A DNA stretch of 63,403 bases, filler included, from Octopus bimaculoides (taxonomy: Eukaryota): the NCBI RefSeq assembly GCF_001194135.2. It is 4 parts of 4 records of this genome, joined end to end, with 100 filler letters (N's around TTAATTAATTAA, not from the genome) between each part and the next. Parts side by side here need not be neighbours in the genome. Positions count along the whole stretch, not along the records: positions 27,958 to 46,132 come from NC_068981.1; 3 more parts are not named here. One strand, given 5' to 3'. Of this stretch, positions 27,958 to 30,400 are shown one piece after another. The translations under genes and the position numbers were made by a program. Positions within the stretch are counted from its first letter, which is position 1. Every line of letters starts with the position of its first letter. Under the pieces are notes generated by a model. It was not told the origin of the DNA and made no database searches. It saw only the letters and a program-made list of their open reading frames with translations.

Positions 27958-28054
27958 TGTCTCTTGAGGTCTCTGGGTGAGACTTGGATCCAACTTGTAC
28001 AAATGCAAAACAAAAGTCAAACATAAAATAATAATAATATTAATAATAATAATG

Positions 28055-28117
<63 letters not shown>
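27958..28117 (+). mobile_element. Dong/R4 3' terminus with (TAA)n tail
   Basis: Near-identical to 15280-15369; GTCTC-TGGGT-GAGAC hairpin near the end. Confidence 0.85.
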
Positions 28118-28119
28118 TA

Positions 28120-28644
28120 GCTAGGATAGAGTATCAAAAAGGTTGGATAGACTATAAAAAAGCTAGGAGAGAATATACAAATGCTTGGATAGACTATAAG
28201 AAGGCTTGGATAGACTATACAAAAGATGCATAGACTATAAAAAAACTTGGATAGACTATGAAAAAGCTGGATAGACTATAAAAAAGCTTGGATAGACTAT
28301 GAAAAAGACAGGGTAGACTATAAAAAAGCTTGGATAGACTATGAAAAAAACTGGATAGACTATAAAAAAGCTTGGATAGACAATAAAAAGCTTGGATATA
28401 CTATAACAAAGCTTGCACAGACTATAACAAAGCTTGGATAGACTATAAAGAAAAGCTTGGACAGACTATAAAAAAAGCTTGGATAGACAATAAAAGAGCT
28501 TGGACAGACTATAAAAAGGCTTGGATAGACTATAAAAATGTTTGGATAGATTATAAAAATGCTTGGATAGACTATAAAAATGATTGGATAGACTATAAAA
28601 AAGCTGGATAGACTATAAAAAAAGCATGGATTAACTATGAAAAA
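28120..28644 (+). repeat. 21-bp minisatellite (25 units, consensus GCTTGGATAGACTATAAAAAA) derived from the RT segment at 28685-28705
   Basis: Units counted by hand (20-23 nt each); the consensus is a circular permutation of 28685-28705. Confidence 0.95.
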
Positions 28645-28647
28645 GCT

Positions 28648-30021
28648 GATTGTCACAAACGACACAAAAACTTGTCAATAGCCTGGATAGACTATAAAAA
28701 AGCTTTTGAGAGCCTACCAAATAGCTGGATTAAGGAATGTCTGGAAATGTATAAAATAGCTACTACTCTGCGAAACGTTTTGTCTGTAAGTATGAGATCA
28801 TAGAGGACCCAACTGACTTTGAACAGTGGTAATGAATCTCTAAATACTGGAGATGTAAGAATTTCATGTGGCATTTTCCAAGGTGACTTACTCTCACCAC
28901 TCCTCTTTTGTCTAGCCTTAATACCTCTCTCGAAATTGTTCAATGATGTACAGTATGGTTATAAAATGCTTGATAAAAATATAAACCATCTCATTTACAT
29001 AGATGATTTAAAGCTCTTTGCAAAAAATGACCAACAACTCAAGGGCCTATTAGCGATTGTTAAACAATTCAGTGATGACACCAGGATGCAATTTGGTATT
29101 GATAAATGTGCAAAAGCTACCTTTATCAAAGGAAAAATGACAGAAACATCTAACGTTAACCTTGACCAGCAGAATGATATAAAAGAGCTAGAACCAGCGG
29201 AGAGCTACAAATACCTAGGGATAATTGAAAGGGACGGAATCAAATATTCAGTGACTAGGGAAAGGATCAGAAGGGAATGTTATCACAGGGGGAGAGCAAT
29301 ACTCAAGACAGAGTTGAGTGCCAGAAACAGGATCGAAGCGATCAATGCTTTAGCTATACCAGTTGTGACTTACAGTTTCAATATCATTAACTGGTCAATT
29401 ACTGAAATATGTAATCTTGACAGAAAAATACGAAAACTATTGACAATGCATAGAATGCACCACCCTAAGGCATATATAGAACGAATTTATTTGCCAAGAA
29501 GAGAGAGAGACCGTGGACTTTTACAACTGAAATTAACAATGAAGATTGCCACAATTGGCCTAGACACCTACATGAAAAACTCTGAGGAGTGGATTTTAAA
29601 CCTTGTCTCAAAACATGAAAAACATGAAAGCATCATACTCAGTAACATAACAGGCAAAGGAATACATAACTGAATTCCAAATACAACAAATACCAAAATT
29701 AGACGTACGAGAAACAAGCACAGAAAAAGCTAAGCGTATGAAAACCCGTGCTAAAACTTCTGCCTTAGATACTTACTGATAAATGGCAAGAAGAGCCTCT
29801 CAATGACTAATGCCCAAAGAGAGCGAATAATACCGATGTTGACAAAGCTCTTACCCATCAATGGTTAATGGCTTCTGGCTTAAAATCAGAAACAGAAGGG
29901 TTTATCATAGCAGCACAAGATCAATGCCGAACTAAAAGGAACTACCAGGCCAACATATTAATGAACGGCAGCTTCCCAACATGTCGTCTATGTCAACAAC
30001 AAAATAAAACCATTGATCATT
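28648..30021 (+). mobile_element. Dong/R4-clade retrotransposon fragment: RT, thumb and start of CCHC finger (pseudogene)
   Basis: AWIDYKKAFES, GIFQGDLLSPLLF, INHLIYIDDLKL, YKYLG, YLPRRERDRGL, KSETEGFIIAAQDQ, CRLCQQQNKTIDH; contains stops and frameshifts. Confidence 0.95.
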
Positions 30022-30052
30022 AAATGATAATAACAATAATAATAACAATAAC

Positions 30053-30128
<76 letters not shown>

Positions 30129-30139
30129 TTAATAATAAT

Positions 30140-30214
<75 letters not shown>

Positions 30215-30262
30215 AGTTATTATTATTATTATTATTATTATTATCATCATTATTATTATTAT
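30022..30262. repeat. (TAA)n followed by (TAT)n microsatellite
   Basis: Directly visible; the TAT part is the tail of the adjacent minus-strand SINE. Confidence 0.95.
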
Positions 30263-30400
30263 TTCTACTATAAGCACAAGGCCTGTAATTTTGGTGGAGC
30301 AGGGAGGTCAATTACATCGCCCCCAGTTCTTGACTGGTACTTATTTCATCGAGCCTGAAAGGATGGAAAGCAAAGTCGACCTTGGCGGAATTTGAACTCA
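30262..30400 (-). mobile_element. SINE family A, 5'-truncated
   Basis: GCAAAGTCGACCTTGGCGGAATTTGAACTCA and GGCACAAGGCCTG-like tail. Confidence 0.85.

What the first reader, a model, noticed from the sequence alone, without database searches (positions are those of the whole stretch)
28120..28705. Minisatellite built from the reverse transcriptase's own catalytic motif, at the 5' truncation junction
Seen: 25 tandem units are copies of 28685-28705 (GGATAGACTATAAAAAAGCTT), the W-I-D-Y-K-K-A segment of the adjacent R4/Dong RT. That Asp is the conserved motif-A aspartate (established RT knowledge). The source 21-mer is flanked by near-identical 5-mers, AGCCT and AGCTT. The array reads GCTTGG rather than GCCTGG, which is the hybrid junction expected from realignment across those 5-mers. 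The array is not contiguous with its source: a unique 33-nt spacer (DCHKRHKNLSI) separates them, and the array joins the truncated 5' end to the (TAA)n target. Inference: during target-primed reverse transcription the RT dissociated, re-annealed downstream on its own RNA and copied a 21-nt window reiteratively, in a telomerase-like way. Counter-evidence: neighbouring units share variants (TATG in units 7, 9, 11; AACAAA in 14-15; AAAAAT in 20-22), so at least part of the array grew by later DNA slippage.
Basis: partly seen in the sequence, partly recalled or inferred. Interest (0 to 1): 0.85.

Follow-up and report, generated by a model that had tools for sequence, protein, structure and literature searches.

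The report
Minisatellite copied from a retrotransposon's RT gene
A 530-bp array of 25 repeats really is copied from 21 bases of the neighbouring retrotransposon's reverse-transcriptase gene, but the evidence points to an ordinary transposon-derived minisatellite that grew partly by DNA duplication, and does not show a telomerase-like act of the enzyme.

Summary
At 28118-28647 there are 25 tandem units of 20-23 bp. Their consensus is identical (21/21) to 28685-28705, the W-I-D-Y-K-K-A (motif A) codons of the adjacent RT fragment. A co-linear 33-nt RT stretch separates array and source.

The left "flank" plus (TAA)n is the 3' end and tail of another copy of the same LINE family. The array-bearing fragment is also truncated at its 3' end: it stops exactly at 30020, inside the CCHC motif, and lacks the endonuclease domain and 3' UTR. 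It is therefore an aberrant internal fragment between two (TAA)n tracts, not a simple 5'-truncated insertion.

Units two apart are significantly more alike than random pairs (0 of 5000 permutations), which marks a 42-bp register of DNA-level duplication. Unit divergence (about 10%; 5.5% in the core) is roughly that of the fragment itself, so the array is old and no longer homogenised.

Best reading: a backward template switch or duplication seeded a locus-specific, TE-derived minisatellite, which then expanded early by slippage or unequal exchange. Fully RT-made reiterative synthesis is not excluded, but nothing specific supports it. Whether the array is single-copy in the genome could not be tested.

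The parts
27958..28022 (+). Last 65 bp of the 3' UTR of an upstream copy of the same LINE family (cut by the edge of the piece)
   Evidence: 86.7% identical to L001 11913-12017, which is the end of the 3' UTR plus the start of the tail of the O. vulgaris copy. The same sequence ends the minus-strand copy at 35490-35420.
28023..28117 (+). (TAA)n tract, 32 copies. It is the tail of the upstream copy and the left boundary of the array.
   Evidence: TRF period 3, 93% matches; sequence.
28118..28647 (+). Minisatellite: 25 units of 20-23 bp, consensus GGATAGACTATAAAAAAGCTT, same orientation as the RT
   Evidence: Mean unit-to-consensus distance is 2.1 of 21. The core GGATAGACTAT differs at 5.5% of sites and the A-run/GCTT half at 15.2%.
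28648..28684 (+). Unique co-linear RT sequence (DCHKRHKNLSI + GCCT) between array and source; its left end is the 5' end of the RT fragment
   Evidence: Translation; alignment to relatives L002 and P0003.
28685..28705 (+). Source 21-mer, the W-I-D-Y-K-K-A codons (RT motif A)
   Evidence: Exact match to the array consensus; lies inside the RVT_1 match.
28648..30020 (+). Decayed internal fragment of a Dong/R4-like LINE ORF, from just before motif A to the start of the CCHC motif (…CRLCQQQNKTIDH). It lacks the N-terminal part, the endonuclease domain and the 3' UTR.
   Evidence: It is 87.7% identical to L001 10011-11264. Homology ends exactly after ATTGATCAT.
30021..30215 (+). (TAA)n tract, about 64 copies, abutting the 3' break of the fragment
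   Evidence: TRF 30023-30215; sequence.
30217..30263 (-). (TAA)n tail, read on the minus strand, of the adjacent SINE-like repeat. It lies head-to-head with the tract above.
   Evidence: TRF TTA x15.7; sequence.

Best explanation
This is a locus-specific minisatellite derived from a transposable element.

Origin of the fragment (shown): an aberrant copy of a Dong/R4-like, (TAA)n-tailed LINE came to lie in or next to the (TAA)n tail of an earlier copy. It is an internal ORF fragment.

Seeding (inferred): at or near the time of integration, one non-local copying event placed a second copy of the segment ending in ...GGATAGACTATAAAAAAGCT directly upstream of the fragment's 5' end at 28648. The most likely event is a backward switch of about 55 nt by the reverse transcriptase at the end of first-strand synthesis. 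A repair polymerase making a templated insertion while the 5' end was joined is the other candidate.

Growth (partly shown, by the two-unit register): the seed was then amplified to about 25 units by replication slippage or unequal sister-chromatid exchange, partly in a 42-bp register.

Decay (shown: no frame is open and unit divergence is about 10%): amplification stopped early and the array has since decayed neutrally along with the fragment. It has no coding or other evident function.
For: - Unit consensus equals the internal RT 21-mer, 21/21, in the same orientation and 37 bp away.
- The array is separated from its source by co-linear RT sequence, so in-place slippage alone cannot explain the layout.
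- Units two apart are more alike than random pairs: mean distance 3.09 against 3.72, 0 of 5000 permutations. Lag 1 and lags 3-7 are not significant. TATG units 7/9/11 alternate with TATA units 8/10/12.
- Edge units (1, 3, 5, 25) are among the most degenerate.
- The array is old. Units differ from the consensus by 10.1% overall and 5.5% in the core. A rough split of the window-versus-L001 divergence (dS 0.27, dN 0.094) leaves about 5-7% neutral decay for the fragment.
- This family rearranges in other copies too. L001 carries an internal deletion and a 176-bp inverted self-duplication.
- TE-derived minisatellites that expand by local duplication are common: 23% of human mini- and satellites (PMC3389668).
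- R2-type 5' junctions often carry duplications, microhomologies and untemplated bases (PMC2718515).
Against: - Only one locus could be examined. No reads and no genome-wide search were available, so single-copy status is assumed, not shown.
- The seeding step is inferred from geometry alone. Neither junction shows decisive microhomology.
- Variation is three times higher in the A-run/unit-junction half than in the core (Fisher p=2.4e-4). Imprecise repeated template jumps would explain that as naturally as A-run instability does.
- Unit divergence as high as the fragment's own decay fits an array made in one burst at integration, which is also what the RT-only model predicts.
- The missing 3' end shows the integration was not canonical, so any TPRT-based account is uncertain.
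Confidence: 0.45

Rival explanations
1. All or most units were made in one TPRT event. The RT reached about 28648, then repeatedly re-initiated at ...GCU (28704) and copied back to U/G (28684/5), in the manner of telomerase or DRT2. A variant: it jumped end-to-end over a 20-21-nt RNA fragment with those ends.
For: - The array is on the 5' side, in the sense orientation and not contiguous with the source.
- Every unit can be written with a single acceptor site (…AAGCT) and a departure site at 28684 or 28685.
- Variation is concentrated at the unit junctions and the A-run.
- Array age is about that of the insertion.
- The same family makes (TAA)n tails, and its L001 copy shows switch-like rearrangements.
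- There are precedents for an RT re-copying a window of a linear RNA (DRT2, PMC12039810) and for serial end-to-end jumping by R2 RT (cited in PMC12039810 and PMC11581009).
Against: - The lag-2 similarity and alternating variants are not expected from independent copies of one template.
- There is no usable realignment homology. The AGCCT/AGCTT overlap is effectively 1 nt, and the alternative TTGAGAG/TGGATAG pairing predicts GCTTTGG, which is not observed (sequence).
- No RNA structure stands out that could stall the enzyme (z=-0.28).
- No second example occurs in the other copy in the piece, in L001, or in 21 related loci.
Confidence: 0.15
2. The array is inherited from the template. Array plus RT fragment plus (TAA)n is a copy of a rearranged, non-autonomous derivative that is itself mobilised, so the structure exists in many genomic copies and did not arise at this locus.
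For: - The fragment lacks its own 3' UTR yet ends in (TAA)n.
- The neighbouring SINE-like repeat also carries a (TAA)n tail without sharing the LINE 3' UTR, which suggests the tail may be enough for mobilisation.
- Dong-R4 is highly active in O. vulgaris: 5 recent families and 1129 recent insertions (PMC13282606).
Against: - No other copy with the array was seen in the 18-kb piece or in L001.
- A protein search with the array's translations found nothing. That search is weak, because few octopus sequences are in the database.
Confidence: 0.2
3. Purely DNA-level origin. A longer copy underwent a 55-bp tandem duplication of 28648-28702. The upstream 21-mer then expanded by slippage, and a later deletion or (TAA)n-associated rearrangement removed everything upstream.
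For: - The boundary ...AAGCT|GATTGT is exactly what a duplication of 28648-28702 would give.
- The fragment has demonstrably lost sequence on its other side.
- The lag-2 structure points to DNA-level duplication.
Against: - It needs three separate events, with the upstream loss ending exactly at the array edge.
- No remnant of a first spacer copy is present in the array.
Confidence: 0.1
4. Assembly artefact: a mis-joined or mis-sized repeat.
For: The region is dense with microsatellites and repeats, and reads could not be consulted.
Against: The units are individually distinct (10% divergence, several indels), which makes collapse or artificial expansion unlikely. The junctions are clean.
Confidence: 0.05

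Closest known systems
Transposable-element-derived minisatellites (e.g. Ahmed & Liang 2012, PMC3389668; the SVA VNTR is an example from my own knowledge)
   Same: The tandem array's unit is an internal TE segment. It lies in or next to the TE copy and shows growth by local duplication of units (lag-2 structure).
   Different: The unit comes from the RT catalytic-motif codons. The array is displaced about 37 bp upstream of its source and forms the 5' boundary of the copy, rather than interrupting the source in place.
5'-junction irregularities of R2/R1/L1 insertions: template jumps, microhomology, untemplated bases, junction duplications (Stage & Eickbush 2009, PMC2718515)
   Same: Extra same-strand sequence sits at the 5' end of a truncated RLE-type LINE, next to a repetitive target.
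   Different: Known cases add a few bases or one duplicated stretch, usually of target DNA. Here there are 25 copies of an internal element window, and the copy also lacks its 3' end.
Reiterative reverse transcription: telomerase; (TAA)n tail synthesis by the Drosophila I factor (Chaboissier et al. 2000, from my own knowledge); DRT2 concatemeric cDNA (PMC12039810)
   Same: It would resemble these if one short RNA window were copied many times head-to-tail by an RT.
   Different: Those systems have defined realignment repeats and dedicated RNA structure, and their products recur. Here no realignment homology or structure was found, the event is seen once, and part of the array carries a DNA-duplication signature.
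Dong / R4-clade LINEs of octopus (PMC9115989, PMC13282606)
   Same: RT plus C-terminal CCHC and restriction-like endonuclease in full-length relatives, with (TAA)n tails and insertion next to (TAA)n.
   Different: This copy is an internal fragment truncated on both sides. Clade placement was not tested by phylogeny.

Membership tests
RLE-type non-LTR retrotransposon, R4/Dong clade | Reverse transcriptase domain with motifs A-C (D...KAFD, QGD..SP, Y.DD) | tested here: met
   Pfam RVT_1 E=1.6e-16. The motifs AWIDYKKAF, FQGDLLSP and YIDDLKLF are in the translation.
RLE-type non-LTR retrotransposon, R4/Dong clade | CCHC motif and restriction-like endonuclease C-terminal to the RT | tested here: met
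   Met for the family. L001 11139-11790 and P0025/P0066 continue CR.C..ETIDH..GC...RPDI..KD...LIDM.VP...K.KY. P0025 aligns with solved R2 proteins through their endonuclease region (9nl3_A, E=1e-21). In this copy only the first half of the CCHC motif survives.
RLE-type non-LTR retrotransposon, R4/Dong clade | (TAA)n at the 3' end / insertion into (TAA)n | tested here: met
   All three copies with a 3' end (upstream copy 27958-28117, minus-strand copy 35866-35332, L001 to 12000) end in (TAA)n. The 5' side of the minus-strand copy is not (TAA)n, so target specificity is not strict or was lost.
RLE-type non-LTR retrotransposon, R4/Dong clade | Phylogenetic placement with Dong/R4 rather than R2, NeSL, HERO or CRE | not tested
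   No reference Dong/R4 sequences were on hand. The assignment rests on the tail type and on published octopus repeat annotation (PMC13282606, PMC9115989).
TE-derived minisatellite | Tandem array with a 10-100 bp unit homologous to an internal TE segment, located in or beside that TE | tested here: met
TE-derived minisatellite | Expansion by local duplication of units | tested here: met
   Lag-2 similarity, 0 of 5000 permutations; alternating TATG/TATA dimers.
Reiterative (telomerase/DRT2-like) RT product | Template window bounded by repeats that let the cDNA 3' end realign | tested here: inconclusive
   AGCCT and AGCTT match at 4 of 5 positions, but the units carry the T variant, which leaves about 1 nt of shared overlap. 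Other possible pairings predict a junction that is not observed.
Reiterative (telomerase/DRT2-like) RT product | Units are independent copies of one template, with no nested sharing of variants | tested here: not met
   Significant lag-2 structure and shared variants in neighbouring units. This applies to part of the array only.
Reiterative (telomerase/DRT2-like) RT product | Recurrence at other insertions of the same enzyme | tested here: inconclusive
   None was found in one further 5'-truncated copy in the piece, in L001, or in 21 loci of distant relatives. The sample is far too small, and the source genome could not be searched.
Reiterative (telomerase/DRT2-like) RT product | Enzyme shown to make 21-nt ladders on this RNA | not testable with these tools
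   This needs biochemistry.
Canonical 5'-truncated TPRT insertion | Intact 3' end of the element followed by its tail | tested here: not met
   Homology to L001 stops at 30020. About 530 bp of ORF and 190 bp of 3' UTR are missing.

The most novel reading that the evidence does not exclude
In a single integration event, a Dong/R4-type LINE reverse transcriptase ran off a broken copy of its own mRNA. It then serially re-copied a 20-21-nt stretch of that mRNA, either by realigning on it or by end-to-end jumps over a 20-21-nt RNA fragment (possibly a small RNA) with ends at 28684/5 and 28704. That would have written most of a minisatellite into the genome at once. It would be a eukaryotic, genomic counterpart of DRT2/telomerase-style concatemer synthesis and a direct RT route to the birth of minisatellites.
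Probability: 0.12. Interest if true: 0.75.

Novelty: new member of a known kind. Interest (0 to 1): 0.3.

Why it matters
If the ordinary reading is right, this is one more transposon-derived minisatellite. Its geometry is tidy enough to show that the first step was not simple in-place slippage. That makes it useful as a worked example, and as a caution that the (TAA)n 'target' beside such LINEs is often another copy's tail.

It would matter more if a genome-wide survey showed many Dong/R4 5' ends carrying arrays of internal windows. That would show that a LINE reverse transcriptase creates minisatellites directly. It would also address the finding that most TE-derived tandem repeats have no known initiating mechanism (PMC3389668).

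Tried and rejected
There is therefore no read depth, no long-read check and no small-RNA check.
- The look-up of encoding contigs with the window's 284-aa RT ORF found no record, so the source assembly could not be reached.
- Two protein searches returned only one octopus relative, P0104. The others are about 60% identical proteins from ENA and Tara metagenome scaffolds. The multi-contig hits proved to be one locus seen in many samples, not paralogues.
- A composite query of the array's three open translations found nothing. This is weak evidence because of repeat bias filters and the scarcity of octopus data.
- TRF on all 22 fetched loci found no LINE-derived array.
- RNA folding of 28648-28760 showed no unusual structure.
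- A full-text search for the 21-mer found no paper. The supplement of the octopus repeat paper contains no repeat library.
- I looked for microhomology that would support the realignment model and rejected it. AGCCT/AGCTT leaves 1 nt of overlap. TTGAGAG/TGGATAG (5 of 7) predicts GCTTTGG, which is not seen. The first junction, GCT|GAT, shares at most GAT with the start of a unit.
- A coding role for the array is rejected: all frames contain stop codons.

Full report
**1. The observation**

Tandem Repeats Finder reports an array at 28112-28647 with period 21, 25.5 copies and 82% matches. Put in register, there are 25 units of 20-23 bp (28124-28647, preceded by a partial unit from about 28118), plus one separate copy at 28685-28705.

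The 21-mer GGATAGACTATAAAAAAGCTT has 18 matches with up to 3 mismatches. All lie in the array or at the source, against 0.01 expected from shuffles. The array consensus equals the source at 21 of 21 positions.

The source lies in frame in ...NLSIAWIDYKKAFESLP..., inside a Pfam RVT_1 match (E=1.6e-16). It aligns with the AWIDxKKAFD motif of relatives. That this is RT motif A, with the conserved aspartate, is established RT knowledge.

The 33 nt between array and source (DCHKRHKNLSI) is genuine co-linear RT sequence. A relative reads ...ENCHNRNTNLSIAWID... at both protein and DNA level.

**2. What surrounds the array**

Relatives were found by protein search. Only one is from an octopus: P0104 of O. 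vulgaris. Its locus, L001 (chromosome OX597814.1), was fetched. The window fragment 28763-30020 is 87.7% identical to L001 10011-11264. Three points change the picture.

- **The left flank is another LINE copy.** 27958-28022 matches L001 11913-11981, the last bases of the LINE 3' UTR just before its (TAA)n tail. The same sequence ends a second copy in the piece, on the minus strand at 35866-35418, with its tail at 35415-35332. The "(TAA)n target" is therefore the tail of an upstream copy of the same family.
- **The fragment is also truncated at its 3' end.** In L001 and in full-length relatives (P0025, P0066), the ORF continues after ...ETIDH for about 180 residues. These cover the rest of the CCHC motif and a restriction-like endonuclease, followed by about 190 bp of 3' UTR. 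In the window, homology stops exactly after ATTGATCAT at 30020 and (TAA)n follows. This is an internal fragment between two (TAA)n tracts, not a standard 5'-truncated insertion.
- **A SINE-like repeat follows on the right.** After the right-hand (TAA)n comes (TTA)n and then a SINE-like repeat on the minus strand.

P0025 aligns with solved R2 proteins through their endonuclease region. Octopus genomes are known to hold abundant Dong-R4 LINEs (PMC13282606, PMC9115989). The Dong/R4-like label is reasonable, but it was not tested by phylogeny.

**3. Internal anatomy of the array**

- **Divergence.** Mean distance of a unit from the consensus is 2.1 of 21 (10.1%). The core GGATAGACTAT differs at 5.5% of sites and the A-run plus GCTT half at 15.2% (Fisher p=2.4e-4). 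These counts are not fully independent, because some variants are shared.
- **Two-unit register.** Units two apart are more alike than random pairs: 3.09 against 3.72, with 0 of 5000 permutations reaching the observed value. Lag 1 and lags 3-7 show nothing. This matches the alternation of TATG units 7/9/11 with TATA units 8/10/12. It marks duplication of 42-bp dimers at the DNA level, or re-copying of an already-made dimer. It is not what independent copies of a single RNA window would give.
- **Age.** Window and L001 differ with dS 0.27, dN 0.094 and dN/dS 0.35, so much of their difference arose in active lineages. A rough split leaves about 7% neutral decay shared between the two copies. L001 looks young, because its inverted self-duplication is 98.3% identical. 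That leaves about 5-7% for the window fragment. This is an inference from a coarse calculation. The array is thus about as old as the fragment and has not been homogenised since.

**4. The junctions**

- All units read GCT(T)GG and none reads GCC. The sequence shared between AGCCT and AGCTT that is compatible with this is effectively one T.
- An alternative pairing of the cDNA end with TTGAGAG (5 of 7 matches to TGGATAG) predicts GCTTTGG, which is not observed.
- The first junction, ...AAGCT|GATTGTCAC, shares at most GAT with the start of a unit.
- The left end of the array merges into (TAA)n within an A/T-rich stretch (ATAATATAGCTAGG).
- The RNA around the window has no unusual predicted structure (z=-0.28).

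The junctions therefore do not discriminate between the mechanisms.

**5. Mechanism**

In-place slippage cannot put the array upstream of co-linear RT sequence, so one non-local step is needed. The simplest is a backward switch of about 55 nt, from 28648 to 28704, by the polymerase that was extending the first strand. A templated insertion during 5' end joining would also serve. Junction duplications, microhomologies and untemplated bases are documented for R2 and R1 (PMC2718515). A purely DNA route remains possible: a 55-bp tandem duplication followed by loss of the upstream part.

Growth from the seed to 25 units is at least partly DNA-level, as the lag-2 structure shows, and it happened early.

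It is compatible with the orientation, the constant acceptor site, the junction-biased variation and the age of the array. It also has precedents in DRT2 (PMC12039810) and in the serial jumping of R2 RT. It does not explain the two-unit register, and nothing specific to it was found.

A further rival is that array plus fragment plus (TAA)n is a mobilised, rearranged derivative present in many copies. The loss of the 3' UTR with retention of a (TAA)n end, and the presence of a (TAA)n-tailed SINE with an unrelated 3' end, make this plausible. It could not be tested.

**6. Limits**

The source assembly could not be reached, and only one other octopus copy could be fetched. Copy number, orthologues and long-read support are therefore untested. 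No LINE-derived array was seen in the second copy in the piece, in L001, or in 21 loci of distant relatives, but this sample is far too small to settle anything. A search with the array's translations found nothing, and no paper contains the 21-mer.

**7. Comparison and verdict**

This is a TE-derived minisatellite, a common class: 23% of human mini- and satellites, most with unknown initiation (PMC3389668). Its displaced position points to a template-switch-type seeding event at the 5' end of an aberrant Dong/R4-like insertion.

It is a new member of a known kind, and interest is modest (0.3). The most novel reading not excluded is direct RT synthesis of a minisatellite, possibly over a 20-21-nt RNA. 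I give it about 0.12. A genome-wide survey of Dong/R4 5' ends would be a cheap test.

Noticed in passing
window 27958-28117: The sequence left of the array is not unique flank. It is the last 65 bp of the 3' UTR plus the (TAA)n tail of another copy of the same LINE, so the copies lie head-to-tail. This fits insertion into each other's tails, or one cDNA made by end-to-end template jumps.
   Followed up: partly
window 30020/30021: The array-bearing LINE fragment stops exactly inside its CCHC motif and runs into (TAA)n. About 720 bp (endonuclease domain plus 3' UTR) are missing. Possible causes are internal priming, a truncated RNA template or a later deletion; which one applies is unresolved.
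   Followed up: partly
L001 9765-10010 (O. vulgaris OX597814.1): The only other octopus copy fetched has an internal deletion of about 114 bp whose right breakpoint falls at the same ATAGACTATAAAAA as the start of the array unit. It also has a 176-bp inverted copy of its own downstream sequence (98.3% identical to L001 10855-11030) inserted about 60 bp further on. This may indicate a hotspot for template switching or breakage at the motif-A codons. With a single comparison it may equally be coincidence.
   Followed up: partly
window 30217-30400 and 35316-35194: A SINE-like repeat of about 125 bp follows the (TAA)n tail of both LINE copies in the same relative orientation (73% identity between the two). 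It has a B-box-like GAGTTCAAATTCC on the minus strand, but ARAGORN finds no tRNA. At 30217-30263 its own (TAA)n tail lies head-to-head with the LINE-side (TAA)n. Its 3' end is unrelated to the LINE 3' UTR, which suggests the tail repeat alone may be what the RT recognises.
   Followed up: partly
window 35866-35332 (minus strand): This is a second, ordinary 5'-truncated copy of the same LINE: the last ~82 codons, the 3' UTR and a (TAA)n tail. Its 5' junction abuts unique sequence with no (TAA)n and no array.
   Followed up: yes
window 28124-28647: Within units, the 11-bp core GGATAGACTAT is three times better conserved than the A-run/GCTT half (5.5% against 15.2%). The last T is missing in six units, and all insertions fall in the A-run or immediately before the final CTT. 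A-run instability and imprecise unit junctions both fit this pattern.
   Followed up: partly
L004-L022; L002/L003: The closest non-octopus relatives of this RT (about 55-63% amino-acid identity) come from ENA metagenome assemblies, including many Tara scaffolds that carry the same locus in different samples. They presumably come from a eukaryotic host genome in those samples. The organism was not identified.
   Followed up: no
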